Assembly (NCBI GenBank): GCA_002269645.1
Contig: NIVC01000300.1
Span: 124,001-188,000, forward strand
Reading direction: 5' to 3'
Source: Macrostomum lignano
Taxonomy: Eukaryota
DNA length: 64,000 bases
Under the pieces are notes generated by a model. It worked only from the letters and a program-made list of their open reading frames with translations. It was not told the origin of the DNA and made no database searches. Shown one piece after another: positions 574 through 64,000 of the stretch. Every line of letters starts with the position of its first letter. The first letter of the stretch is position 1. The translations under genes and the position numbers were made by a program.

Positions 574-1487
574 ACGCTCAAACGCACACAGCTTGGTGCG
601 ATTTCGCTATTCTCCGTCTTCGTTGCAGCAAAAATCGAATTCATATTATCGCTTGTCTTGTGTGGCTTTCCATTCCTGCATTGCTTAGCAAAATGGTTAG
701 CCTTACCGCACTTGGTGCACGATTTCCCCCAGGCTGGACATTTCTCCTTTCCGCGTTCGTGCTCACATCCGCAGAATTTGCAGATTGGGTGCTTCGCCAC
801 TATCTGACTTCGTTGAGCGGGTCCACCTGCCTGGCGGGCATCTGCGGCGGCAGTTTGCTTGGCCTTCTTGTAGCTCGAAACTCTTCGAACTGCAGAGATT
901 GTCGACGTCTCGCCCTTCATCGCGGCACAATTCTTCTTGGAGCTTTCCATTGACTCACAAATCGTCTTGGCTCTTTCTAGTGTCAGCTCGCTGCCTTCTT
1001 CCAGCAACTTCTCCACTGTGCTGTGATCTCGAAGCCCCATGACGATTCTGTCTCTGATCTGGCACTCCGCACATATACCACAGCAGCGCTCAAAGTTGCA
1101 TCGCGATGCCATTTCCTTTATTGCCACGTACCAGTCGCTGAACGATTGGCCCTCCATCTGATTCCGTAACGAAAACTCGCGGCGCTCGAATATTTCATTT
1201 CGCTGGCCCGTGATGAACAGCTCCAGGGCCTTGATGATCTCTCCGGCGTCGTTCTTGTTCTCCTCGGTCAGATGCGGCAAGCTGTCCACGACGCGCAGTG
1301 TCTCCATGCTCAGGCATTGGCGTAGCGCGAAAAGACGGTACTTCTTTTTCTCGTCCTCGTTGTCCAGACTGTTGAGTCCTGAGAGCTCCTCGAAGGCCTC
1401 CCACAGTAGCTTCCAATGTGGGTATAGCTCCTTCTGTGACTCGATGTCGAAGTGCGGCGCACTTCGGACGTCGATCTTGGGTGCCAT
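574..1487 (-). CDS. gag: Ty3/gypsy Gag (element B), truncated before protease
   Basis: ATG at 1487 follows an in-frame TGA at 1506-1508. Translation MAPKIDVRSAPHFDIE...RNQMEGQSFSDWYVAIKEMASRCNF...IRDRIVMGLRD...CPAWGKSCTKCGKANHFAKQC includes a CCHC knuckle. Absent from the ORF track because the frame has no stop before the window edge. Confidence 0.9.
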
Positions 1488-1510
1488 CTTGCACTTTTGG
1501 GCTTTTCACT

Positions 1511-1664
1511 TGGCTGCTTGCGATGCCATGTTGTGTACGAAGCCGAGCGGCTCAATATCGCGCAAACCTAAACTTTGCCCAGAGGGCTGTGCCGCGCTGT
1601 AGCCCACGCATATATTTCTACCATAGATATAAGGTTATAAGGGTACTGAGCCCAATACCCAACA
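1511..1664 (-). mobile_element. 5' LTR (1529-1664, 136 bp) and PBS of gypsy element B
   Basis: Minus strand reads TGTTGGG...ACAACA and is followed directly by a TGGCATCGCAAGC PBS-like sequence and then gag. It interrupts the RT of element A exactly at 1664/1665. Confidence 0.75.
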
Positions 1665-3468
1665 GGATGCACCTGTCAGCCAAAGGCATCCAACCAGCTG
1701 CTGAGAAAATCCGCGCAATGCAAGACTTCCGGCAGCCCGCCAATGTCTCAGAAGTTCGGTCGTTTCTCGGCACCGCAAACTTTCTGGCGAAATTCATCCC
1801 AAGATTCGCCGACGTGTCAGCCCCGCTGCGCCATTTGACCAAGAAGGGCCAGCCATGGGAATGGACTGCCAGCCACACTGAGGCGTTCAGCACAATCAAG
1901 AAGGCCATCGCCGGAGCCGACACGCTGGCGTTCTTCGACCGCAAGCGGCAGACGGAGCTTCTGGTGGACGCATCTTCCATCGGTCTCGGCGCCATCCTCA
2001 CCCAGAAGCAGCCAGACGGCAGCAGCAGACCCGTGGCCTACGCCAGATGTGTCAGCAGGTGCCGTGCCAAAGGGATTCAGCCTTCAGCAGATCTGAGACT
2101 CTTCAAGGACTGACACGGAGATCCAGGCTGCGCTCAGCGCGATCAAAACCGGCAGCTGGAACATGCTCGACCCGGTGCAACGCGCACTCAAGTCCAGCAG
2201 CAGCGAACTTTCCGAGAGCGACGGAATTCTGCTCCGCGGAGATCTCATCGTTGTCCCCGAGTCGCTGCGGAGACCGATACTGCAGCTGGCCCATACGGGA
2301 CATCTCGGTGCGGACAGAACCCTGAAGCGACTGCAGACCAAAGTCTGGTGGCCAAAGATGCGCAGCGACTGCAAAGTATTCGTCAAGTGCTGTGTCGGTT
2401 GCCAAGCAGCGGCCACGCACGTGCACCAGACGCCTTTGAAGCCGACGGAGATGCCGGGCGGACCTTGGCAACTGCTCGGCATGGACTTCTACGGCCCGGT
2501 GCAAGGTCAGATGCTGCTGGTCACCACGGACCTGTGCTCCAAGTACCCGGAAGTCGACATCATGCAGTCAACGACGGCCGGCAACGTGACACCGCATCTG
2601 AGACGGCTGTTCGGTCGGCACGGCATCCCTGCTGAGGTCATCACGGACAACGGACCGCCCTTTAACTCTGCCGACTTTCGCAGCTTCCTCAGCGGATACG
2701 GAGTTCATCATCGGCTCATCTGTCCGCTGCATCCGGAGTCCAACGGAGCCACCGAGCGTGTCAACCGCAGCATCGGGAAGGTCGTGAAGACTGCTGTCGC
2801 TGAAGGTCGGAACTGGAGAGAGGCCCTGGACGACTGGCTTCTGGCGTTCCGCACAACGCCTCACCGAGCAACTGGGCGGACTCCGGCCGAGCTCTTCATG
2901 GGCAGGCCGATCAACGACGGAATCCCAGCCAGCAGGCAGCCGAAGTCATCTGACGTCAGCCAGGAAGCCGTGAAAGATGAAGAGTGCGTTCGACAGGCGC
3001 TCGGCCGCAAAGAAGCACCGCATCGTTCCCGGCATGAGTGTTCTTCGCAAGCAGCAGGCACGCAAAAAAACGCAGCTGCCATTCGAAACTCAGCCATGGA
3101 CGGTGCAGGAGGTTCGAGGCGACACCTGCGTCCTACGGCGAGGCCAGCAGTATTGTATGCGGCACGTGACCCAGCTGCGGCCTCTGATGGAACCGGCGGG
3201 CCAGTCCACCGGCCAGTCCACCGGCCAGTCAGCCGGCCAGTCCGCCGGCCAGTCCACCGGCCAGTCCGCCGGCCAGTCCACCGGCCAGTCCGCCGGCCAG
3301 TTAGCCGGCCAGTCCGCCGGCCAGTCCGCCGGCCAGTCCGACGGCCAGTCAGCCGGTCAGTCCGCCGGCCAGTCCGCCGGCCAGGCCGCTAGTGAAGAAG
3401 CAGAGTCTGTGGCTCAGAGACGGCATCCAAGAGCAGCCCGCGACACGCCGAAGTGTTATACGAGTTAA
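1665..3468 (+). pseudogene. pol: Degenerate Ty3/gypsy pol (element A): RT C-terminus, partial RNase H, integrase
   Basis: VRSFLGTANFLAKFIP and LLVDASSIGLGAILTQ...PVAYA (RT/RNase H). Integrase HHCC (HTGHLG...CVGC) and core (LLGMDFYGP, ITDNGPPF, NGATERVN). Internal deletion near 2045, frameshifts near 2110 and 2975. Confidence 0.9.
3199..3386 (+). repeat. 12-bp tandem repeat (ggccagtccrcc) in the integrase C-terminal tail
   Basis: About 15 copies, encoding GQST/GQSA in the 2977-3468 frame. Confidence 0.9.
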
Positions 3469-10641: not shown

Positions 10642-39683
<29,042 letters not shown>

Positions 39684-46400: not shown

Positions 46401-49400
46401 TCAAGGTGTAAAGTATTTTATCGACGGCTGAGAGGCAAATCGAACATGGCGAGAACTTCTTGAATGAGTATTAGCGGCTGGTGACTCATTAGGCGGAGCA
46501 GTAGGCTCTGGAAGGGTCTCCGGTGGCGGCGGCGGTAGCGTAGCTGGTTTAAGTCGGTCGATTGACACTGTGGTGGGCCGGCCGTTGATCTCTAGCGTCA
46601 TTGTTGTTTCATGTCTGCTAAGAACAGCGAACGGGCCTTGATAAGGTGCTTCAAGCGAACGCCTCACGCGATCTAACCGTAGCCACACGTGTGTGCAGGA
46701 GTCCAGCGCGGTCGGCATATGGGTGGGGACCGGACGAGTTCGCGGTAGGCGGTAGGGGAAAAACATTTGGTGGAGCTTGGTCGATAGCTCTGTCAGAGTC
46801 GAAGTGTCGGCCACTACTTGCGGAACCATGGGTTGCTCTCCAGTAACAAGTGAGAAAGGTGATGATCCGGTTTCGTCCGCAAAGATACGCATTCCAAGAA
46901 GAACGAGAGGCAGTTGGCTCAACCAGTATTTTCCGCGTGCTTTTAGGCCCGTCTTCAACGTTCTATGAGCGCGTTCGACGATGCCGTTGGCTCGCGGATT
47001 GTATGAAGAAGTTCGGATATGGTGAATCCCCAGGTGCTGCGTCAGGTTTTTCATGAGCTCGGCTCGGAACTGCGTCCCTTGGTCGCTAATCAATGTAAGC
47101 GGTGGTCCGAAGCGGGCAATCCAGGATGCTAGGAAAGTCCGCGCGACGGTCTCAGCCGTGGTGTCCATGACGGGAGTAGCCTCGATCCAGCGTGTGTATG
47201 AATCCACCATGGTCAGCAGGTATCGGGGTTTTGGTCCAACCGCGTCGGATTCGGGCGGCGTCAATGGTCCGACTAGGTCGATGTGCACCGTCGTGAATCG
47301 TTGCGATGGTACTGGTAACTGGTGGAGCGGCCGGTGAATATGCTTGCTAACTTTGCATTGCTGGCAGCGCTCACATTCAGTGACCCACTTCTTGATGTCG
47401 GCGAACATATTAGGCCAGAAAAAACGGTATCCGACAAGCCTCTGTGTCGCTTTTACTCCCGGGTGCGCCAAAGTGTGTAGCGAATCAAACACTTTTCGGC
47501 GAAGCGGTCCTGGTACTTCAGGGCGTGGGTTGGCTTGTGAAGTCTCGCAGCGAAGCGGGCACTCTGGGATTCCGATGTCAAAGTGCTTGAACTGGCCGGC
47601 CGGAGTGTCTTCAGGCGTTAGATCTTTCTGAGCTCTTGCAATAGCCGGAAGGTCAACGGCTGTTGGGACATCTTCTAAGAGTCGCACGTTGTTGGTCTGG
47701 GTAACTGAGGGTGGTTCTGGACGAGACAGTGCGTCGGCTACTACGTTGTCTTTACCGGCGATGTATACAATGTCGAGAACGTACTCAGTTATCGCTGAAA
47801 GTTGGCGCTGTTGGCGGTCAGAGAAACGCTGTTTCCGATTCTTGAAAGCTCCCACGATTGGCTTGTGGTCACAGAACACCGTGACAGGGCGACCTTGGAC
47901 CATGTGCTTCCAGGTTTTGACGGCGGCGAAAATAGCCAGTAGTTCTCTGTCGAACGTGCTGTAGGCTCTCTCGGTATCCGACAGTTTGCGCGAGTAAAAA
48001 GCTAGGGGTGCAGACTTGTCGTCTACCACTTGATGTAGGGCTGCGCCTAAGGCCGTTGAGCTTGCGTCCGTAGTGATAGTGAGCATTGCGCTAGGTTCGG
48101 GGAACGCTAAAGTTACGGCCTCAGCCAGGCTGTTTTGAAGCAGTTTCCAAGCTTCGTCATGCTGGTTCGTCCAGACGAACTGACTCGAACTGACGAGTTG
48201 GCGAAGAGGCTGTACTACTTGGGCGTATGCGGGGATGCAACGTTGGTAGAAACCAAACATTCCCAGATAGCGCTGGAGCGTCTTTTGATCGGTCGGGGCC
48301 TGCAGTTTGCGAAGGGCCTCCACTCGAGTGGGAAGTGGCTTGATTCCCTCGGCTGATACGAGGTATCCCAGAAATTCCACTGAGTCTCGGAAGAACTGAC
48401 ACTTTGCTGCGTTAACCCTCAGACCTTTGTCCGTTAGACGCTGAAGGATGGCTTGCAGATGTTGCTCGTGTTCTTGTCGAGAAGTGCTGTGCACTAGGAT
48501 GTCGTCGATGTATGAAACGACAAAGGGGAAATCTCGAAAGATTGCGTCGACGAACCTCTGGAACGTGCTAGCTGCGTTGCGCAGTCCGAAGGGCATTCGA
48601 AGGTATTCGAAAGATCCAAAAGGGGTGCAGATTGCGGTCTTTTCTATCGCGTCTTCAGCCATGGGGACGAAGTGATAGGCCTTGACGAGGTCAAGGGTGC
48701 TGAATACTTTCGACCCATGCAGCTGGTTGTGGAAGTGGTTAATGTTCGGTATGGGGTACCGATCGGGCTTGGTCACGGCGTTCAAAGCTCGATAGTCACC
48801 ACAAGGGCGCCAAGATCCGTCTTTTTTTCTCACCATATGAAGGGGCGATGCCCACGGGCTGGAAGATGGTCGGACGATTCCGAGTCGAAGCAGCTTGTCA
48901 AACTCTTCCTTTGCAACAGTGAACTTTTCCGGTGACAGTGGTCGTGGTCGGCGGAAGATCGGCTCGCCTTCCGTTTCGATCGGATGTCGGACGCCTGTTG
49001 CGGATGGGGTCGTGTAGTCGGGCGCCTCTAGTACGCGTGGAAACTGGGTGAGCGGGTTTGATGGTTCCATTTCCGTTGTCACGTTGATTTGTGGAACTGG
49101 ATCGGAAGAGCAGTTCAGGGCTGTGGATAATTCCGTTACTGGGTCTGTGATGCGTCTCGACTTAAGGTCGATGATCAAACCGAACTTTACGAAGAAATCC
49201 GCTCCGAGAATCGGTGCCGTATTAGTGACGATGAATGTTGCTGGGTATGGTCGCCGGAGCCCCGGAATAGAGAGAGTCAGGCAGCATTGTCCAAAGGTAC
49301 GGATCTCATGTCCACCAATGCTGCGCAACTTCACGGGTGTCGGAGTTAGCAGATTTTGAGGGACGTACTGTAGAGGCAGGAGTGACCGTTCGGCTCCAGT

Positions 49401-49616
49401 GTCAACAATAAACGAAACCATGGTGCGAAGAACGTTGCAACGGAGTAACAAAGTGGTGGCCTTGCTCTGGTCACGGGTCGGCCAGGGCACGTGACCGACT
49501 AGTTTGAAGCACTTTCTAGAGTTGGGCTGTTTGCACGCGAGTGATCTGGTGTTGTCTGGCGGCTGCTGAGCATCGTTGTGGGTTTGGGACCGGGCCATTT
49601 GCACCAAGGTCAGCAC
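46401..49616 (-). CDS. pol: Pol polyprotein: protease, RT, RNase H, integrase with GPY/F motif
   Basis: IVDTGA, WASPLHMVRKKDGSWRPCGDYRALN, SYIDD, TTDAS, HTLAHPG...CERC, VHIDLVGP, ISDQG, NGIVERAH, APYQGPF. The frame is -1 relative to gag. Confidence 0.97.
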   Translation of the reverse strand: MLTLVQMARSQTHNDAQQPPDNTRSLACKQPNSRKCFKLVGHVPWPTRDQSKATTLLLRCNVLRTMVSFIVDTGAERSLLPLQYVPQNLLTPTPVKLRSIGGHEIRTFGQCCLTLSIPGLRRPYPATFIVTNTAPILGADFFVKFGLIIDLKSRRITDPVTELSTALNCSSDPVPQINVTTEMEPSNPLTQFPRVLEAPDYTTPSATGVRHPIETEGEPIFRRPRPLSPEKFTVAKEEFDKLLRLGIVRPSSSPWASPLHMVRKKDGSWRPCGDYRALNAVTKPDRYPIPNINHFHNQLHGSKVFSTLDLVKAYHFVPMAEDAIEKTAICTPFGSFEYLRMPFGLRNAASTFQRFVDAIFRDFPFVVSYIDDILVHSTSRQEHEQHLQAILQRLTDKGLRVNAAKCQFFRDSVEFLGYLVSAEGIKPLPTRVEALRKLQAPTDQKTLQRYLGMFGFYQRCIPAYAQVVQPLRQLVSSSQFVWTNQHDEAWKLLQNSLAEAVTLAFPEPSAMLTITTDASSTALGAALHQVVDDKSAPLAFYSRKLSDTERAYSTFDRELLAIFAAVKTWKHMVQGRPVTVFCDHKPIVGAFKNRKQRFSDRQQRQLSAITEYVLDIVYIAGKDNVVADALSRPEPPSVTQTNNVRLLEDVPTAVDLPAIARAQKDLTPEDTPAGQFKHFDIGIPECPLRCETSQANPRPEVPGPLRRKVFDSLHTLAHPGVKATQRLVGYRFFWPNMFADIKKWVTECERCQQCKVSKHIHRPLHQLPVPSQRFTTVHIDLVGPLTPPESDAVGPKPRYLLTMVDSYTRWIEATPVMDTTAETVARTFLASWIARFGPPLTLISDQGTQFRAELMKNLTQHLGIHHIRTSSYNPRANGIVERAHRTLKTGLKARGKYWLSQLPLVLLGMRIFADETGSSPFSLVTGEQPMVPQVVADTSTLTELSTKLHQMFFPYRLPRTRPVPTHMPTALDSCTHVWLRLDRVRRSLEAPYQGPFAVLSRHETTMTLEINGRPTTVSIDRLKPATLPPPPPETLPEPTAPPNESPAANTHSRSSRHVRFASQPSIKYFTP

Positions 49617-50347
49617 GTACGGGCTTGTGAAGCGTAGAATAGATGGCCATTACAGATCTTAGGTCTCTTACGATAGGAGCGCTGTTGCCGGTGATCTCCT
49701 TCGTACGCCTGCCTAGGCTTGAACGCGCCGTGCGGTCTTGAATCCCTGGCTTCGGACGTGCGCTGAATGGGTAAAAACGGAGTTCGGCTGCCCGCGACGG
49801 CTAACATGCTGTCGGCGATTTTGGCGAAGTCTTCTAGCGGAGATTTTTCATGACCGACCAACGCTGAACGGATGTGCGTTGGGAGCGCCGTGAGCAGGCG
49901 TGACTTGATGATAGACTCGTCGGCTGCTAAACCCACTTCGATGAAGCGGCGCTTAATGTCAGTTACCAATTGCGAAGGGCGTTTGTCGCCGAGTTCTACT
50001 GCTGCAAGGGCTTCCTCGATACGCTGGTGGCGGTTGGCGCGCAGTGAGTCTAGAACAGCTGTTTTGAGTCGGTTGTATTCGACGATGTCTATGTCGATGT
50101 AGCAGGCAACATCCTCTGGGAGAGCGGCCAGTGCGTGGTGGAATTTGGTGCTGGCGGAGCTGATTCCAGCCAGGGTAAATTGTGATTCGAGTTGGCGGAA
50201 CCAAATCTCGGGTGCTTGACGGTAGAACGGCGGTGGTCTAATTGTGGCGCGTTGTACCGACGCTACCGGTTCCGGTATGGCGTTCTCCGAAGAAGCTGCC
50301 GCAGGTGGAGTGTCTGATGGAGGTTGTTGACGTTGGGTGTCTTCCAT
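49499..50347 (-). CDS. gag: Gag with CHCC motif, interrupted by TGA at 49610-49612; natural-looking end TAG at 49499-49501
   Basis: PPFYRQAPEIWFRQLESQF...LGDKRPSQL; CNGHLFYASQARTC*PWCKWP completes C-x2-H-x9-C-x3-C if the stop is read as a codon. Confidence 0.9.
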
Positions 50348-54304: not shown

Positions 54305-55810
<1,506 letters not shown>

Positions 55811-56169
55811 TTAGCTACTTAGTTTTAGTATTCTTGAGAGTTATCTTCATTATGAACTTTTCCCTCTATTTGCGCTTGTAATATTCTTTCAAGCTACTCC
55901 TCGCATTCAGTGAGTAGCTTATAAGGACATGCTTTTTTTGCGAATGAATTGTTTACACAAAGAAAAATTTCGTAGAAAAGAGGAATATTTTAGCCAGGAC
56001 AGTCAATTAATAGCTGTTAATTAATTTTGTTAAAATCGTGTTTTTTATCTGTTGATTGTGCCTTTGATATACTTTTCTTGACCGCTTTATTAAATAAACA
56101 AAAATCTGGAAAAAGAATTTTCAGTAATCTGAAGAGCCTTGCACTGGGATTTTGTAGAATTAATCGGTT

Positions 56170-58119
56170 ATAATAATCTCCTTTGCCTGCCGATTTGCGC
56201 TGGTCGGAGCTCAGATCGGATTGGCACAAGTTGTGCAGGTAGGACACGGCAGAATTTGCAGCACCAATTGTAAACAATGTCGTCGCTCCTTGTGAGACAC
56301 CTCAGCTGGCTTAGCGACCTCTGGCGCTTGCTGGCCAGCGGCTGGGTAGCTGGAAAATATTAGACTGATGAATTTAAATATGTCAATGACTACCAGAGGT
56401 TGATGGGCGAGGATTTTAGGTAAAAGAAGCCCCAAGCTCCCTTCCAGTTCAGATGGGCTGCAGGGTCCATGGTTCAGTTGGCTCCAAGCTCCCTTCCAAT
56501 CCAGATAGGCTGCAGGGTCCATGGTTCAGTTGGCTCCAAGCTCCCTTCCAGTCCAGATAGGCTGCAGGGTCCATGGTTCAGTTGGCTCCAAGCTCCCTTC
56601 CAATCCAGATAGGCTGCAGGGTCCATGGTTCAGTTGGCTCCAAGCTCCCTTCCAGTCCAGATAGGCTGCAGGGTCCATGGTTCAGTAAGCTCGAAGCTCC
56701 CTTCCAGTCCAGGTGGGCTTCAGGGTCCATGGTTCAGTTGGCTCCAAGCTTCCTTCCAGTCCAGGTGGGCTGCAGGTCCATGGTACAGTTGGCTCCAAGC
56801 TTCCTTCCAGTCCAGGTGGGCTTCAGGGTCCATGGTTCAGTAAGCTCCAAGCTCCCTTCCAGTCCAGGTGGGCTGCAGGGTCCATGGTTCAGTAAGCTCC
56901 AAGCTCCCTTCCAGTCCAGATAGGCTGCAGGGTCCATGGTTCAGTAGCCTCCAAGCTCTCTACCAGTCCAGATAGTCTGCGGAGTCTATGATTTAGTAAA
57001 CTCGAAGCTCCCTTCCAGTCCAGGTGGGCTGCAGGTCCATGGTTCAGTTGGCTCCAAGCTTCCTTCCAGTCCAGGTGGGCTGCAGGGTCCATGGTTCAGT
57101 AAGCTCCAAGCTCCCTTCCAGTCCAGGTGAACTGCAGGTCCATGGTTCAGTTGGCTCGAAGCTCCCTTCCAGTCCAGGTGGGCTGCAGGGTCCATGGTTC
57201 AGTAAGCTCCAAGCTCCCTTCCAGTCCAGGTGGGCTGCAGGGTCCATGGTTCAGTTGGCTCGAAGCTCCCTTCCAGTCCAGGTGGGCTGCAGGGTCCATG
57301 GTTCAGTAAGCTCCAAGCTCCCTTCCAGTCCAGGTGGGCTGCAGGTCCATGGTTCAGTTGGCTCCAAGCTTCCTTCCAGTCCAGGTGGGCTGCAGGGTCC
57401 TTGGTTCAGTAAGCTCCAAGCTCCCTTCCAGTCCAGGTGGGCTGCAGGGTCCATGGTTCAGTTGGCTCCAAGCTCCCTTCCAGTCCAGGTGGGCTGCAGG
57501 GTCCATGGTTCAGTAAGCTCCAAGCTCCCTTCCAGTCCAGGTGGGCTGCAGGGTCCATGGTTCAGTAAGCTCGAAGCTCCCTTCCAGTCCAGGTGGGCTG
57601 CAGGGTCCTTGGTTCAGTAAGCTCCAAGCTCCCTTCCAGTCCAGGTGGGCTGCAGGGTCCATGGTTCAGTTGGCTCCAAGCTCCCTTCCAGTCCAGGTGG
57701 GCTGCAGGGTCCATGGTTCAGTAAGCTCCAAGCTCCCTTCCAGTCCAGGTGAACTGCAGGTCCATGGTTCAGTAAGCTCCAAGCTCCCTTCCAGTCCAGA
57801 TAGGCTGCAGGGTCCATGGTTCAGTAGCCTCCAAGCTCTCTACCAGTCCAGATAGTCTGCGGAGTCTATGATTTAGTAAACTCGAAGCTCCCTTCCAGTC
57901 CAGGAGGGCTGCAGGGTCCATGGTTCAGTAGCTCTTAACTGATCCCTTCCAGTCCAGGTCGGCTGCAGGGTCCATGGCTAACTCACTCAGCCGCCGCAAC
58001 GCCGTCCCTCGCTTGTCTTCGTACAGGCCGGCGGTGCTGTCGTAGACGCCGCCCCAGTCGGCGCAGGCGGCGGTCACCTCCTCGATCAGGCGGAGGCCGC
58101 ACTCGGTCAGCCAGCGGGC
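56170..58119 (-). pseudogene. Insulin-like peptide paralog 2, damaged; B-chain exon 58119-57987, A-chain exon from 56349
   Basis: ARWLTECGLRLIEEVTAACADWGGVYDSTAGLYEDKR | TTQPLASKRQRSLSQLRCLTRSDDIVYNWCCKFCRV[frameshift]SYLHNLC. Intron phases match paralog 1. No signal-peptide exon was found. Confidence 0.8.
56430..57975. repeat. 52-bp minisatellite filling intron 2 of ILP paralog 2
   Basis: gctccaagctcccttccagtccaggtgggctgcagggtccatggttcagt(tg/aa). Confidence 0.95.
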
Positions 58120-58127
58120 CTGCGAGT

Positions 58128-58572
58128 ATGTGTGACTCAGCAGCCATAGCATGTGTGACTCAGCAGCCATAGCATGTGTGACTCAGCAGCCATAGCATGT
58201 GTGACTCAGCAGCCATAGCATGTGTGACTCAGCAGCCATAGCATGTGTGACTCAGCAGCCATAGCATGTGTGACTCAGCAGCCATAGCATGTGTGACTCA
58301 GCAGCCATAGCATGTGTGACTCAGCAGCCATAGCATGTGTGACTCAGCAGCCATAGCATGTGTGACTCAGCAGCCATAGCATGTGTGACTCAGCAGCCAT
58401 AGCATGTGTGACTCAGCAGCCATAGCATGTGTGACTCAGCAGCCATAGCATGTGTGACTCAGCAGCCATAGCATGTGTGACTCAGCAGCCATAGCATGTG
58501 TGACTCAGCAGCCATAGCATGTGTGACTCAGCAGCCATAGCATGTGTGACTCAGCAGCCATAGCATGTGACT
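58128..58572. repeat. 23-bp minisatellite, ~19 copies, each containing TGACTCA
   Basis: atgtgtgactcagcagccatagc. Confidence 0.95.
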
Positions 58573-58810
58573 CACAGGATCGCTAGCCGATTGGCTGTCT
58601 CGACTGATTGGCTGGCCTCAGAACCCGCGCGAGTTTGCAATTTTACGCAATAAGCTCACAATGCCGCATCTTCCGAACTTCTGAAGTTTCTCAACTATAG
58701 TTTATGGCGAAACCCCATTTTTAGTATATGGATTTGCGAAATCTGTTTTAAAATCTTAAGTCTGTATTTAGAGCGTTGTAATCTATCTGAAGTAATATAC
58801 TAGATTTGTG

Positions 58811-59360
58811 CAGCCCATTTGGGCTTACGCGCACCTCCATTAGCAACTGCTTTGGAGGAGTAAGATCAGTCACTATGACCCTATGCTAGGCTGATGAACG
58901 AATGCCATTGGCTTGTGATCGAAGCGCTCGACATAAATGAACACCCAAATGACATTGTAAGGTTGTAAGATTGTTGAATATAAAAGAAAAGATGGTTAAC
59001 AGCATCCATCGGCGCGTTGAAACCACTGCCGGCAGAGGTCGCCTACGAAAGGGTGGCAATCGCCAAGGCAAGTTGGTCGAGAGCCTCAGCCCCAGGTCGA
59101 ACCCTTTGGTGACGGAGCAGAAAATGCAGCAAAGTTGAAGGAACAGTTCTGATTGGTTATCAGATTTTGACTATCAGAAGAGCTCTGGAAAAGGCACTGA
59201 AAATTGTTGGTAGAGACGCTGACAGTTTGCCGAATGACTGACGAGGGTTTGGACCAAATTAAGTGCCGCTGTGCCAGCCTTGCTACCATAGACAAAAGCT
59301 CCACTGCACTGGCAAGCGTGTCTTGGATTGAATTAAATGCATGTAAGCCCAAATGGCCTG
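58811..59360 (-). mobile_element. ~550-bp non-autonomous TIR element (copy 2)
   Basis: Ends cagcccatttgggcttac and gtaagcccaaatggcctg are inverted repeats, and the interior matches 32995-34640. No TSD was recognised. Confidence 0.7.
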
Positions 59361-59639
59361 AAAAGGCCATATTTAATTTTACAGATTTTTCCCAACGAGC
59401 TTGTGAAACATCCTTCGACGAAACGCTACGCGCAGATGCAGTGGGAAACACAGAGCTAAAATGTCCGTACGCCAAAAGAGCCATGATTTTGAGAGTTATT
59501 TGGGAAACTTTTTGGTCGCAGAACTCTCTGCGTTCGATTTTAATGAATTTTTATTCATGTTAATATCGTATTGGTGGCAAGTTTGTCAAATTCATTCGAG
59601 CTTTGTCACTCCGGATCAGAGAGGCAGCTCAACTCGGAC

Positions 59640-60211
59640 TCAGACGGGCTCAGGCAGGGCGCAGAACTGCTGCAGGTAGGAGACGCGGCACCAGCGGCAG
59701 CAGCACTGGTTCACCACGTCGTTGCTCTTGTTGAGCCGGCAGCCAAGGTCGAAGATGCTCGGCACGCTGCTCCTCTTGCTGGCGGCGACGCCTGCGGGCA
59801 GCGAGACGGGGCGAGTTTGCAACGGGTTTGCTGCTGGGGATTCCCTATTGGGAAGAGAGAGGAGAAAATGCACTGGGCGAGCTTGCAGCAAGACACGCAC
59901 GGTCCAGCAGTGCCGCGGTGGCCAGTCTCTGCCGGCGCCGGCTCACGAGCTGCCCGTAGATGCCGCTGGTGCTGTCGTAGACCCCGCCTCGGTCAGCGCA
60001 GGCGTTCCGGAGCTCCTGCACCAGACGCTCGCCGCACTCGTTGATTGACTCATTCTGCGAATCAGGTTGCGAGGCCGGTTGGCGAGTGGCTGCACGGAAG
60101 CGAGTCCTGGCATGGGAGATTCAGGAGAGAGGGACTTACCGGATCCTTGTAGGCCGCGCAGGAGGCGGTGAGGCAGGCAAAAGCCAGGGCGGTCAGCGCG
60201 AAGGCGTTCAT
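59640..60211 (-). CDS. Insulin-like peptide precursor 1 (~139 aa); exons 60211-60140, 60054-59901, ~59833-59640
   Basis: Signal MNAFALTALAFACLTASCAA; B chain ECGERLVQELRNAC; RRR and KR sites flank the C-peptide; A chain ...LGCRLNKSNDVVNQCCCRWCRVSYLQQFC (CC-x3-C-x8-C). The exon 3 acceptor is ambiguous between 59833/59830 and 59844. Confidence 0.9.
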
Positions 60212-60294: not shown

Positions 60295-60330
60295 CCCTAT
60301 TTATGCTTTCCGGGCTGCGGCCTCATTGGC
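60295..60330 (-). promoter_or_regulatory. Putative CCAAT and TATA-like core promoter of ILP1
   Basis: Minus strand ggccaatg (~60325) and cataaatag (~60304-60297), ~90 nt upstream of the ATG. Confidence 0.4.
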
Positions 60331-60929: not shown

Positions 60930-62715
60930 TGGAGCCCACGATGAGACAGAGGCGGCACTTTCTAGGAAACAGGGACAGGGGCGCCATCCCAGAGACAGTG
61001 GCGCCACCCCAGAAACAGGGGCGCCACCCCAGAGACAGAGGCGGCACCCAAGAGAAAGGGGCACCACCCAAGAGACAGGGGCGCCACCCCAGAGACAGGG
61101 GCGCCACCCCAGAGACAGAGGCGGCACCCAAGAGACAGAGGCGCCACCCAAGAGACAGGGGCGCCACCCAAGAGACAGGGGCGCCACCCAAGAGACAGGG
61201 GCGGCACCCCAGAGACAGAGGCGCCACCCAAGAGACAGGAGCGCCACCCAAGAGACAGAGGCGCCACCCAAGAGACAGGGGCGCCACCCAAGAGACAGGG
61301 GCGCCACCCCAGAAACAGAGGCGCCACCCAAGAGACAGGAGCGCAATAAACAGGGAAGCGCCAGACAGAAGTGCCCTCGCCAAAAAGACAGGGGCCTCCA
61401 CCCAAGAGGCAGGGGCGCCACCCAAGAGACAGGGGCGCCACCCAAGAGACAGGGGCGCCACCCAAGAGACAGGGGCGCCATCCAAGAGACAGGGGCGGCA
61501 CCCAAGAGACAGGGGCGCCACCCAAGAGACAGGGGCGCCACCCCAGAAACAGAGGCGCCACCCAAGAGACAGGAGCGCAATAAACAGGGAAGCGCCAGAC
61601 AGAAGTGCCCTCGCCAAAAAGACAGGGGCCTCCACCCAAGAGGCAGGGGCGCCACCCAAGAGACAGGGGCGCCACCCAAGAGACAGGGGCGGCACCCAAG
61701 AGACAGGGGCGCCACCCAAGAGACAGGGGCGCCACCCAAGAGACAGGGGCGCCACCCAGAAACAGAGGCGCCACCCAAGAGACAGGAGCGCAATAAACAG
61801 GGAAGCGCCAGACAGAAGTGCCCTCGCCAAAAAGACAGAGGCCTCCACCCAAGAGGCAGGGGCGCCACCCAAGAGACAGGGGCGCCACCCAAGAGACAGG
61901 GGCGGCACCCAAGAGACAGGGGCGCCACCCAAGAGACAGGGGCGCCACCCAAGAGACAGGGGCGCCACCCCAGAAACAGAGGCGCCACCCAAGAGACAGG
62001 AGCGCAATAAACAGGGAAGCGCCAGACAGAAGTGCCCTCGCCAAAAAGACAGAGGCCTCCACCCAAGAGGCAGGGGCGCCACCCAAGAGACAGGGGCGCC
62101 ACCCAAGAGACAGGGGCGGCACCCAAGAGACAGGGGCGCCACCCAAGAGACAGGGGCGCCACCAAGAGACAGGGGCGCCACCCCAGAAACAGAGGCGCCA
62201 CCCAAGAGACAGGAGCGCAATAAACAGGGAAGCGCCAGACAGAAGTGCCCTCGCCAAAAAGACAGAGGCCTCCACCCAAGAGGCAGGGGCGCCACCCAAG
62301 AGACAGGGGCGCCACCCAAGAGACAGGGGCGCCACCCCAGAAACAGAGGCGCCACCCAAGAGACAGGAGCACAATAAACAGGGAAGCGCCAGACAGAAGT
62401 GCCCTCGCCAAAAAGACAGAGGCCTCCACCCAAGAGGCAGGGGCGCCACCCAAGAGACAGGGGCGCCACCCAAGAGACAGGGGCGCCACCCCAGAAACAG
62501 AGGCGCCACCCAAGAGACAGGAGCGCAATAAACAGGGAAGCGCCAGACAGAAGTGCCCTCGCCAAAAAGACAGAGGCCTCCACCCAAGAGACAGGGGCGC
62601 CACCCCAGAAACAGAGGCGCCACCCAAGAGACAGGAGCGCAATAAACAGGGGAGCGTCAGACAGAAGTGCCCTCGCCAAAAAGACAGAGGCCTCCACCCA
62701 AGAGGCAGGGGCGTC
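60930..62715. repeat. 20-bp satellite (ccacccaagagacaggggcg) with a higher-order spacer unit
   Basis: Monomer blocks are punctuated by the recurring ggagcgcaataaacagggaagcgccagacagaagtgccctcgccaaaaagac segment. Confidence 0.95.
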
Positions 62716-63224: not shown

Positions 63225-64000
63225 TCTCTGTGTCTGTCTCGGAGCATGTTTCAGTGTCTGTCTCAGTGTCTGTCTCAGTATCAGTCTCAGTGTCTGTCTC
63301 AGTGTCTGTCTTAGTGTGTGTCTCAGTGTCAGTCTCAGTTTGTGCCTGAGTATCAGTCTCAGTGTGTGTCTCAGTATCAGTCTCAGTGTGTGTCTCAGTG
63401 TCAGTCTCAGTGTGTGTCTCAGTATCAGTCTCAGTGTGTGTCTCAGTGTCTGTCTCAGTGTGTCTCAGTGCCTGTCTTAGTATCTGTCTCAGTGTGTGTC
63501 TCAGTATCAGTCTCAGTGTGTGTCTCAGTGTCTGTCTCAGTATCAGTCTCAGTGTCTGTCTCAGTGTCTGTCTCGGAGCATGTTTCAGTGTCTGTCTCAG
63601 TGTCTGTCTCAGTATCAGTCTCAGTGTCTGTCTCAGTGTCTGTCTTAGTGTGTGTCTCAGTGTCAGTCTCAGTTTGTGCCTGAGTATCAGTCTCAGTGTG
63701 TGTCTCAGTATCAGTCTCAGTGTGTGTCTCAGTGTCAGTCTCAGTGTGTGTCTCAGTATCAGTCTCAGTGTGTGTCTCAGTGTCTGTCTCAGTGTGTCTC
63801 AGTGCCTGTCTTAGTATCTGTCTCAGTGTGTGTCTCAGTATCAGTCTCAGTGTGTGTCTCAGTGTCAGTCTCAGTGTGTCTCAGTATCAGTCTCAGTGTG
63901 TGTCTCAGTGTCTGTCTCAGTGTGTCTCAGTGCCTGTCTTAGTATCTGTCTCAGTGTGTGTCTCAGTATCAGTCTCAGTGTGTGTCTCAGTGTCTGTCTC
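63225..64000. repeat. GTCTCA-type repeat with ~330-bp higher-order duplication
   Basis: The marker gtctcggagcatgtttcag recurs near 63235 and 63570. Confidence 0.9.

What the first reader, a model, noticed from the sequence alone, without database searches (positions are those of the whole stretch)
56170..60211. Tandem pair of insulin-like peptide genes with an 8-cysteine, CCC-type A chain
Seen: ILP1 has 2 Cys in the B chain and 6 in the A chain (an extra upstream Cys plus CCC-x2-C-x8-C), implying a fourth disulfide within the A chain. ILP2 shares the intron phases, GGVYDST, ASKR and the upstream Cys. Neither precursor appears whole in the ORF track. Known: canonical insulins have three disulfides. 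I recall a CCC A-chain motif being reported for parasitic flatworm ILPs, which needs verification. Inference: a local expansion of insulin signalling ligands.
Basis: partly seen in the sequence, partly recalled or inferred. Interest (0 to 1): 0.8.

Follow-up and report, generated by a model that had tools for sequence, protein, structure and literature searches.

The report
Flatworm insulin-like gene plus decayed copy
The region holds one intact insulin-like hormone gene of the flatworm Macrostomum lignano, with the eight-cysteine pattern already seen in other flatworm insulins, followed by a broken duplicate, so it is a sound but ordinary finding.

Summary
The window is Macrostomum lignano genomic DNA (contig NIVC01000300.1, assembly Mlig_3_7). 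Both features lie on the minus strand.

It is real and intact.
- It has three GT-AG exons and encodes 125 aa.
- It scores above the Pfam Insulin cut-off.
- It has C-x11-C in the B chain and C-x11-CCC-x2-C-x8-C in the A chain.
- It is identical to GenBank gene models BOX15_Mlig006842g1/g3, named "hypothetical protein". That annotation was built from RNA-seq.

**The cysteine pattern is not new.**
- A published paper states the CCCX2CX8C signature for schistosome insulin-like peptides (ILPs).
- The published planarian Smed-ILP-1, Fasciola gigantica ILP and two other M. lignano ILP families all show CCC plus the upstream Cys.
- A fourth disulfide within the A chain is inferred, not shown. Both structure models were too poor to test it.

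It is a true paralogue (47% identity) but looks like a pseudogene.
- It has no start or signal-peptide exon.
- The first Cys of the CCC is Trp.
- The last A-chain Cys is lost through a 2-bp deletion here and an independent 11-bp deletion in the two sister genomic copies.
- The ancestral stop codon is out of frame, and both introns are filled with minisatellites.

The "local expansion of ligands" reading is therefore not supported.

The parts
60298..60329 (-). Putative core promoter of the intact gene: CCAAT (60329-60325) and a TATA-like ATAAATA (60304-60298), about 90 nt upstream of the ATG
   Evidence: Read directly from the sequence. Promoter function is inferred only.
60140..60211 (-).
   Evidence: Identical to GenBank proteins PAA85949.1 / PAA85986.1.
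59901..60054 (-). ILP-U exon 2: B chain (Cys31-x11-Cys43, GGVYDST), the RRRQR cleavage site and the start of the C peptide. It ends with a phase-1 donor GTGCGT.
   Evidence: The Pfam Insulin match covers residues 31-119.
59640..59791 (-). ILP-U exon 3: rest of the C peptide, the KR site, and an extended A chain SSVPSIFDLGC(93)RLNKSNDVVNQC(105)C(106)C(107)RWC(110)RVSYLQQFC(119)ALPEPV. Stop TGA at 59642-59640.
   Evidence: The alignment to IGF-II puts C105/C106/C110/C119 at A6/A7/A11/A20 and C107 at A8.
59550..59555 (-). AATAAA polyadenylation signal of ILP-U, about 85 nt after the stop codon
   Evidence: Read from the sequence. Inferred.
58128..58569 (.). 23-bp minisatellite (19 copies, 100% matches) that abuts the acceptor of the downstream copy's B exon, where an exon 1 and intron 1 would be expected. 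Copy number differs between genomic copies (14, 18, 19).
57987..58119 (-). No upstream start or signal exon was found.
   Evidence: 100% identical in all three genomic copies.
56350..57986 (-). ILP-D intron, almost wholly a 52-bp minisatellite (56427-57977, about 30 copies)
56168..56349 (-). ILP-D A-chain exon remnant. It keeps ASKR and the upstream Cys (TGT 56299-56297). TGG (Trp, 56266-56264) replaces the first Cys of CCC. A 2-bp (AG) deletion lies between 56247 and 56246. The final Cys codon (56226-56224) is therefore out of frame. The homologous TGA (56213-56211) is also out of frame. The reading frame runs on to TAA at 56170-56168.

Best explanation
The locus contains one functional insulin-like peptide gene of the free-living flatworm Macrostomum lignano, followed 1.5 kb downstream by an old, decayed tandem duplicate. 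The intact gene is Mlig006842, on the minus strand at 60211-59640. It encodes a 125-aa prepropeptide with a signal peptide, a B chain, a short C peptide and an A chain. The C peptide is flanked by RRRQR and KR, which are probable prohormone-convertase sites. The A chain has a 17-residue N-terminal extension. Six cysteines sit at the canonical insulin positions (B7, B19, A6, A7, A11, A20) and should form the three canonical disulfides. The two extra cysteines lie at position A8 and 11 residues before A6 in the extension. They most likely pair with each other, tying the extension back onto the first A-chain helix. This architecture is shared by the planarian, the liver fluke and the three M. lignano ILP families examined, and at least its CCC part by schistosomes. 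By analogy with planarian ilp-1, the mature hormone is expected to act on an insulin-receptor tyrosine kinase and to control growth, stem-cell division and the germline. Shown here: gene structure, family membership, cysteine pattern, identity to a transcript-derived gene model, conservation of the pattern, and the lesions of the downstream copy. Inferred: cleavage sites, the fourth disulfide, the receptor and the physiology.
For: Gene model: canonical splice sites and an open 378-nt CDS. It is identical to BOX15_Mlig006842g1/g3, with the same 572-bp start-to-stop span. GenBank annotation of this assembly was derived from RNA-seq-based transcript assemblies (PMC5730564). Family: Pfam Insulin is above its cut-off, and phmmer matches IGF-II, IGF-I and insulin on both chains. 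Constraint on the intact gene: across the three genomic copies the CDS shows three synonymous changes and one non-synonymous change, the latter in the signal peptide. Conservation of the 8-Cys pattern: M. lignano Mlig029872/027486 (C-x11-CCC), Mlig020476 (C-x10-CCC) and Fasciola gigantica ILP (C-x14-CCC); Smed-ILP-1 (C-x10-CCC-x2-C-x8-C; PMC2953531 supplement); schistosome CCCX2CX8C (PMC5391603); alignment. Decay of the downstream copy: no signal exon; Trp at A6; a 2-bp deletion in this copy against an 11-bp deletion in the two sister copies, each removing the last Cys; dN/dS of about 0.66 against the intact gene, with dS of about 0.54; no gene called there in any of the three copies; no protein match to its A chain in 5.8 billion sequences.
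Against: No direct RNA reads or cDNA were available to me. Transcript support for the intact gene is indirect, resting on how the GenBank annotation was made. Both AlphaFold models were of low confidence (pLDDT 54 and 52), and the fold search returned nothing meaningful. Neither the insulin fold nor the disulfide pairing is therefore shown structurally. For the downstream copy, the 2-bp and 11-bp deletions both shift to the same frame and the same tail (PIRSELRPAQIGRQRRLL*). This would also be expected if that frame were under selection, although chance alone gives it 1 time in 3. Its two exons are identical in all three copies. The GenBank annotation also excluded transcripts that overlap repeats, so the absence of a gene model there is weak evidence.
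Confidence: 0.85

Rival explanations
1. Both copies are functional, and the downstream one is a divergent ILP that borrows the signal-peptide exon of the upstream gene by alternative splicing. The exon-1 donor and the downstream B-exon acceptor are both phase 0. The product would be a peptide with an unusual cysteine set.
For: The phases are compatible. Splice sites of the downstream exons are intact and identical in three genomic copies. Both deletion variants end in the same reading frame and tail. Older automated gene models (UniProt A0A1I8F3V9, A0A1I8INL0) string exons of both copies together.
Against: Such a product would lack two invariant insulin cysteines (A6 and A20), leaving B19 and A11 without partners. 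The sequence around the lost Cys differs by frame-disrupting indels between copies. The ancestral stop is out of frame. The intact gene has its own polyadenylation signal before the downstream exons. No transcript-based gene model exists. The old fused models come from an error-prone earlier assembly and contain obvious frameshift artefacts.
Confidence: 0.07
2. The lesions in the downstream copy are assembly errors of a long-read assembly, and the real gene is intact.
For: The assembly was built from error-prone long reads, and the region is flanked by minisatellites. The indels cluster within 25 bp.
Against: The same A-exon sequence occurs identically in two independent places (L001 and L002) and differs from the window copy. 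The copies also differ by many ordinary substitutions, so they are separate loci rather than one locus mis-assembled. The Cys-to-Trp change and the missing signal exon are not indels. Even after the 2-bp deletion is mended, the frame runs past the homologous stop.
Confidence: 0.05
3. The two extra cysteines of the intact peptide do not pair with each other. For example, the upstream Cys could lie in a segment removed during processing, leaving the A8 Cys free or used for dimerisation.
For: In planarian Smed-ILP-1 a KK site lies between the upstream Cys and the CCC. A peptide ending at that site was reported by mass spectrometry, with low score (PMC2953531 supplement). The spacing between the upstream Cys and the CCC varies (10, 11 or 14 residues).
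Against: In the M. lignano and Fasciola sequences there is no dibasic site between the two cysteines. The two extra cysteines always occur together in the flatworm sequences examined. An unpaired Cys in a secreted hormone is unusual. Cleavage at KK would not prevent the piece from staying attached through a disulfide.
Confidence: 0.3

Closest known systems
Smed-ILP-1 (insulin-like peptide 1 of the planarian Schmidtea mediterranea)
   Same: Same phylum and the same 8-Cys layout: B chain C-x11-C and A chain C-x10-CCC-x2-C-x8-C (PMC2953531 supplement). It is a prohormone with a signal peptide and basic cleavage sites. It is expressed in the nervous system and testes and is implicated in keeping stem cells dividing (Miller and Newmark 2012, cited in PMC3552358).
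   Different: Only about 19% identity in the alignment. It has a much longer C region and a KK site between the upstream Cys and the CCC, which the M. lignano peptide lacks. The spacing is x10 rather than x11.
Schistosome and liver-fluke ILPs (SjILP, SmILP, ShILP; Fasciola gigantica FgILP)
   Same: The A-chain signature CCCX2CX8C is stated for the schistosome ILPs (PMC5391603). FgILP (WUG45439.1) was recovered as a homologue (E = 2e-6, 40% identity). It shows an upstream Cys plus CCC-x2-C-x8-C and the motif NDVV-QCCC.
   Different: The schistosome genes have two exons with an 8-12 kb intron, whereas this gene has three small coding exons with introns of 85 and 109 bp. In FgILP the upstream Cys is 14 residues from the CCC. 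I could not read the schistosome sequences to check for their upstream Cys.
Echinococcus multilocularis emilp1 / emilp2
   Same: Two ILP genes lie next to each other on one contig, 17 kb apart. A tandem ILP arrangement is therefore already described in a flatworm (PMC3923246).
   Different: Both Echinococcus genes are expressed, were cloned as cDNA, and bind the receptor EmIR2 in yeast two-hybrid assays. Here the second copy is degenerate and lies only 1.5 kb away.
Four-disulfide insulins of molluscs and nematodes (molluscan insulin-related peptides; C. elegans beta-type)
   Same: They have eight cysteines and one disulfide beyond the canonical three (my own knowledge of these families, not tested here). 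The Pfam nematode beta-type model gives a weak sub-threshold hit (14.8 bits against a cut-off of 21).
   Different: In those families one extra Cys is in the B chain and one in the A chain, so the extra bridge runs between chains. Here both extra cysteines are in the A chain or its extension, and the B chain has only two.
Vertebrate IGF-II / IGF-I / insulin
   Same: These are the best solved-structure sequence matches, covering both the B and A regions. The conserved features are CG-x-LV, C-x-DRG followed by an aromatic residue, and VxxCC-x3-C-x8-C.
   Different: They have six cysteines, no N-terminal A-chain extension, and Phe or Thr at A8 instead of Cys. The IGFs remain single-chain.

Membership tests
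Insulin/IGF/relaxin superfamily (Pfam PF00049): upstream gene | Profile match above the curated threshold | tested here: met
   26.4 bits against a gathering score of 23; residues 31-119 cover profile positions 4-81 of 81.
Insulin/IGF/relaxin superfamily: upstream gene | B-chain C-x11-C and A-chain CC-x3-C-x8-C cysteine framework | tested here: met
   Cys31-x11-Cys43; Cys105-Cys106-(C,R,W)-Cys110-x8-Cys119.
Insulin/IGF/relaxin superfamily: upstream gene | Secretory signal peptide and basic cleavage sites bounding a connecting peptide | tested here: met
   The N-terminal hydrophobic segment MNAFALTALAFACLTASCA, RRRQR and KR are present in the sequence. Actual cleavage was not tested.
Insulin/IGF/relaxin superfamily: upstream gene | Insulin fold (three helices held by three disulfides) | tested here: inconclusive
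   The AlphaFold2 models had pLDDT of 54 (single sequence) and 52 (9-sequence alignment). Helices fall where the B, A1 and A2 helices are expected, but the Foldseek search gave no match with E < 1.
Insulin/IGF/relaxin superfamily: upstream gene | Spliced mRNA that joins the B and A exons | tested here: met
   Indirect evidence. The GenBank gene models (PAA85949.1 / PAA85986.1) give an identical product and span the same 572 bp from start to stop as my model. That annotation was built from RNA-seq transcript assemblies (PMC5730564). I did not see reads.
Insulin/IGF/relaxin superfamily: upstream gene | Binding to and activation of an insulin-receptor-type tyrosine kinase | not testable with these tools
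   This needs a binding or signalling assay.
Flatworm-type ILP (CCC A chain): upstream gene | A-chain signature CCC-x2-C-x8-C | tested here: met
   Cys105-107, x2, Cys110, x8, Cys119. The signature is as stated in PMC5391603.
Flatworm-type ILP (CCC A chain): upstream gene | Additional Cys 10-14 residues upstream of the CCC, after the last basic cleavage site | tested here: met
   Cys93 lies 11 residues before Cys105. The same feature is present in Mlig029872, Mlig020476, FgILP and Smed-ILP-1.
Flatworm-type ILP (CCC A chain): upstream gene | Fourth disulfide between the two extra cysteines | not testable with these tools
   No model coordinates of usable confidence were obtained. Disulfide mapping is needed.
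Insulin/IGF/relaxin superfamily: downstream copy (as a working gene) | Profile match above the curated threshold | tested here: not met
   20.1 bits against a cut-off of 23, even after the frameshift was mended by hand.
Insulin/IGF/relaxin superfamily: downstream copy (as a working gene) | Complete cysteine framework in one reading frame | tested here: not met
   Trp (TGG, 56266-56264) sits at the A6 position. The A20 Cys codon is out of frame in this copy and deleted in copies L001 and L002.
Insulin/IGF/relaxin superfamily: downstream copy (as a working gene) | Start codon and signal peptide | tested here: not met
   There is no homologue of exon 1, and no convincing ATG-to-donor exon between 59640 and 58120. 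The only in-frame ATG (58152) gives MLWLLSHTYSQA from the last minisatellite unit.

The most novel reading that the evidence does not exclude
Flatworm insulins may form a phylum-wide structural class of their own. In this class a fourth disulfide lies entirely within an N-terminally extended A chain (A8 to about A-6) and closes a variable 13-17-residue loop. In the mollusc and nematode types the fourth bridge runs between chains instead. The presence of this architecture in Macrostomum, an early-branching free-living flatworm, as well as in planarians and flukes would date it to the base of the rhabditophoran flatworms. It would be a ligand feature absent from the hosts of parasitic flatworms. 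The open literature I could search states the CCC motif but not this pairing.
Probability: 0.5. Interest if true: 0.45.

Novelty: new member of a known kind. Interest (0 to 1): 0.3.

Why it matters
Macrostomum lignano is a transgenic model for stem cells, regeneration and germline biology, and insulin signalling controls stem-cell division and body size in planarians. I found no paper in the searched library that describes its ILPs, and this gene is labelled only "hypothetical protein".

Three results should be useful to people working on that model:
- This locus is a bona fide flatworm-type ILP.
- The species has at least three such families (Mlig006842, Mlig027486/029872, Mlig020476).
- The neighbouring copy is dead.

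The last point helps with designing RNAi probes or knock-outs that avoid or account for the pseudogene and for the three near-identical genomic copies. The wider point is modest. The eight-cysteine layout is shared between free-living and parasitic flatworms, so the free-living model could be used to work out the structure and receptor pairing of a ligand type that parasites also use.

Tried and rejected
1. Structure prediction was tried twice, once with a single sequence and once with a 9-sequence alignment. Both models had pLDDT near 52-54, and the Foldseek search against the PDB was meaningless. There is therefore no structural test of the fold or of the disulfide pairing.
I could not collect a deep alignment or the schistosome and cestode sequences.
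3. The downstream copy's conceptual protein found no homologue in that database.
4. I searched for a third paralogue in the window by tblastn. Only the two loci were found, and the remaining hits were noise.
5. I searched for a signal-peptide exon for the downstream copy. The candidates were weak. The best hydrophobic ORF (59005-58943) has no similarity to exon 1 and a poor donor.
I used the identical database entry P0004 instead.
7. Wang et al. 2014 (FEBS J), the original description of parasitic flatworm ILPs, is not held in the library.
8. P0010, a 1469-aa Schistosoma haematobium product, was rejected as a spurious hit to a repetitive protein.
9. I considered whether the window and L001 were the same locus from different assemblies. 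This was rejected. The window is 100% identical to L003, while L001 and L002 differ by ordinary substitutions.
Full report
**Origin and orientation.**
- The conceptual product of the upstream gene is 99% identical to the Macrostomum lignano protein BOX15_Mlig006842g2. It is 100% identical to the product of g1 and g3, PAA85949.1 / PAA85986.1.
- The window is 100% identical, over every segment I compared, to locus L003. That locus is contig NIVC01000300.1 of assembly GCA_002269645.1 (Mlig_3_7), around 173.6-194.2 kb.
- Both ILP sequences are on the minus strand.

- Reading the minus strand gives three exons: 60211-60140, 60054-59901 and 59791-59640. The donors are GTAAGT and GTGCGT, both acceptors are CAG, and the intron phases are 0 and 1.
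- The 378-nt CDS encodes MNAFALTALAFACLTASCAAYKDP NESINECGERLVQELRNACADRGGVYDSTSGIYGQLVS RRRQR LATAALLDRVAAS KR SSVPSIFDLGCRLNKSNDVVNQCCCRWCRVSYLQQFCALPEPV.
- Two cysteines lie in the signal peptide. The B chain has Cys31-x11-Cys43. The A-chain region has Cys93, then 11 residues, then Cys105-106-107, x2, Cys110, x8, Cys119.
- Pfam Insulin matches above its gathering score (26.4 against 23 bits).
- IGF-II, IGF-I and insulin are the best matches among solved structures, and they align to both chains. These alignments, and my multiple alignment, place Cys105, 106, 110 and 119 at A6, A7, A11 and A20. Cys107 falls at A8, which is Thr in human insulin and Phe in IGF-II.
- A CCAAT box, a TATA-like ATAAATA about 90 nt upstream of the ATG, and an AATAAA 85 nt after the stop are visible. 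Their function is inferred.

**Transcript support.**
- I had no reads. However, the GenBank annotation of Mlig_3_7 was produced from a genome-guided RNA-seq transcript assembly plus a de novo transcriptome, with ORFs called by TransDecoder (PMC5730564).
- The annotated gene span in L003 covers exactly the 572 bp from my ATG to my stop, and it gives the identical protein.

**Copies of the locus.**
- The assembly holds three copies: L001 and L003 on one contig about 130 kb apart, and L002 on another contig.
- All three copies carry an intact upstream gene. Their coding differences are three synonymous changes and one Ala3Thr change in the signal peptide.
- All three copies also carry the downstream copy, so the tandem duplication is older than the triplication.

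- It is a real homologue. The B-chain exon is 58119-57987 (acceptor CAG, donor GTGAGT, phase 1) and the A-chain exon starts at 56349 (acceptor TTTTCCAG).
- It shares 47% identity with the upstream protein and 36% with the next closest M. lignano family.

It carries a series of defects:
1. No exon with a start codon and signal peptide exists between the two genes. There is no similarity to exon 1 and no convincing candidate. A perfect 23-bp minisatellite (58128-58569) sits exactly where exon 1 and intron 1 would be.
2. Gap-free alignment shows NWCCKFC opposite QCCCRWC. The motif is therefore WCC, with TGG at 56266-56264 in place of the invariant A6 Cys.
3. After CRV the window copy lacks 2 bp (AG, between 56247 and 56246). 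This puts the YLHNLC codons, including the A20 Cys at 56226-56224, out of frame.
4. The two sister copies L001 and L002 keep those 2 bp and read RVSYL in frame. They lack the 11 bp CACAACTTGTG that encode HNLC.
 - The simplest history is an ancestor with ...CRVSYLHNLC... that suffered two independent deletions, each removing the last cysteine.
5. The TGA homologous to the upstream gene's stop (56213-56211) is out of frame in every version.
6. dN/dS against the upstream gene is about 0.66, with dS about 0.54, over 58 codons. This is a small sample but consistent with relaxed constraint in an old duplicate.
7. No gene is called there in any copy. No protein in the 5.8-billion set matches its A chain. 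Even a hand-mended translation falls below the Pfam cut-off (20.1 bits).

- I conclude that this copy is a pseudogene.
- Three caveats apply. Both deletions land in the same frame. The exons are identical among copies, but at the local 0.5% divergence only about 1.4 differences are expected. The GenBank annotation also dropped transcripts that overlap repeats.
- The phase-0 acceptor could in principle accept the upstream gene's exon 1, and I keep that as a low-probability rival.

**Is the eight-cysteine pattern new? No.**
- The exhaustive HMMER search found two further M. lignano ILP families: Mlig029872/027486 and Mlig020476, the latter with four copies. It also found the Fasciola gigantica ILP. 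All of these have an upstream Cys followed 10-14 residues later by CCC-x2-C-x8-C.
- The published prohormone sequence of planarian Smed-ILP-1 reads ...SPESINCNAYKKSLVDECCCKSCTMLNLFKYC..., which is the same layout (PMC2953531 supplement).
- Every flatworm ILP I could read, from a macrostomid, a planarian and a liver fluke, has this layout; for schistosomes I have only the stated CCC signature.
- An adjacent pair of ILP genes is also already described in Echinococcus multilocularis (PMC3923246).
- I found no paper in the searched library that describes M. lignano ILPs or names Mlig006842.

**Mechanism.**
- What is shown is the precursor architecture. What is inferred is as follows.
- Signal-peptide removal is expected after ...ASCA. 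Convertase cleavage is expected at RRRQR and KR, releasing a 13-residue C peptide.
- The mature product would be a two-chain hormone whose 43-residue A chain keeps a 17-residue N-terminal extension. It would have the three canonical disulfides plus a fourth between Cys93 and Cys107.
- The fourth bridge rests on three points: the two extra cysteines always occur together, a free thiol in a secreted hormone is unlikely, and the variable spacing suits a closed loop.
- The low-confidence model places short helices at 88-95 and 101-107, which could form a hairpin bringing the two residues together. I give this no weight.
- In the planarian a KK site lies between the two cysteines, and a low-scoring mass-spectrometry peptide ends there. 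Processing may therefore differ between species, and the pairing remains open.
- The physiological role is taken by analogy from planarian ilp-1. That gene is expressed in the CNS and testes and is linked to stem-cell maintenance.

**Verdict.** The finding is sound but ordinary. The one open question of some interest is the fourth disulfide within the A chain, which would be a structural hallmark of flatworm insulins.

Noticed in passing
window 46401-50347 (-), and 1418-3392 (+): A Ty3/gypsy-type LTR-retrotransposon pol ORF of 1071 aa (protease, reverse transcriptase, RNase H, integrase) is preceded by a DUF7041 gag-like ORF. A second, broken pol fragment (RNase H plus integrase) lies near the left end of the window.
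   Followed up: partly
window 28247-29245 (+): A long open exon encodes a von Willebrand factor type A domain (Pfam VWA, E = 5e-39). It probably belongs to an unrelated neighbouring gene.
   Followed up: no
window-wide, e.g. 54318-55824, 19889-20576, 24013-24763, 14322-15595, 33095-34171, 60974-62640, 63225-64000: The window has an exceptional density of micro- and minisatellites: TTAG x376, GAGT x172, AGTT x188, a 1.3-kb CT-rich block, and arrays of 20-bp and 12-bp units. They explain the extreme GC- and AT-skew blocks in the composition profile.
   Followed up: partly
window 56246 and leftwards, compared with L001/L002: Divergence between the window copy and the two sister copies rises from about 0.5% on the intact-gene side to about 2.5% at the indel cluster in the pseudogene's A exon. 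This may be a recombination or gene-conversion boundary between duplicated blocks.
   Followed up: no
window 58128-58569 and 56427-57977; L001-L003: The 23-bp array has 14, 18 or 19 exact units in the three genomic copies. The intron filled with the 52-bp array is about 520 bp longer in L001. The minisatellites are therefore evolving faster than the flanking sequence.
   Followed up: partly
Smed-ILP-1 sequence in PMC2953531 supplement (not in the window): The planarian ILP has a KK site between the upstream Cys and the CCC, and a reported mass-spectrometry peptide ends there. The Cys-bearing extension may be cut off and perhaps held on only by the disulfide, giving a possible three-piece hormone. 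M. lignano and Fasciola lack that site.
   Followed up: no
UniProt entries A0A1I8F3V9 (207 aa) and A0A1I8INL0 (681 aa): Older automated M. lignano gene models fuse the intact ILP, pieces of the pseudogene and unrelated downstream exons, with frameshift artefacts. They are mis-predictions that could mislead domain or orthology surveys.
   Followed up: partly
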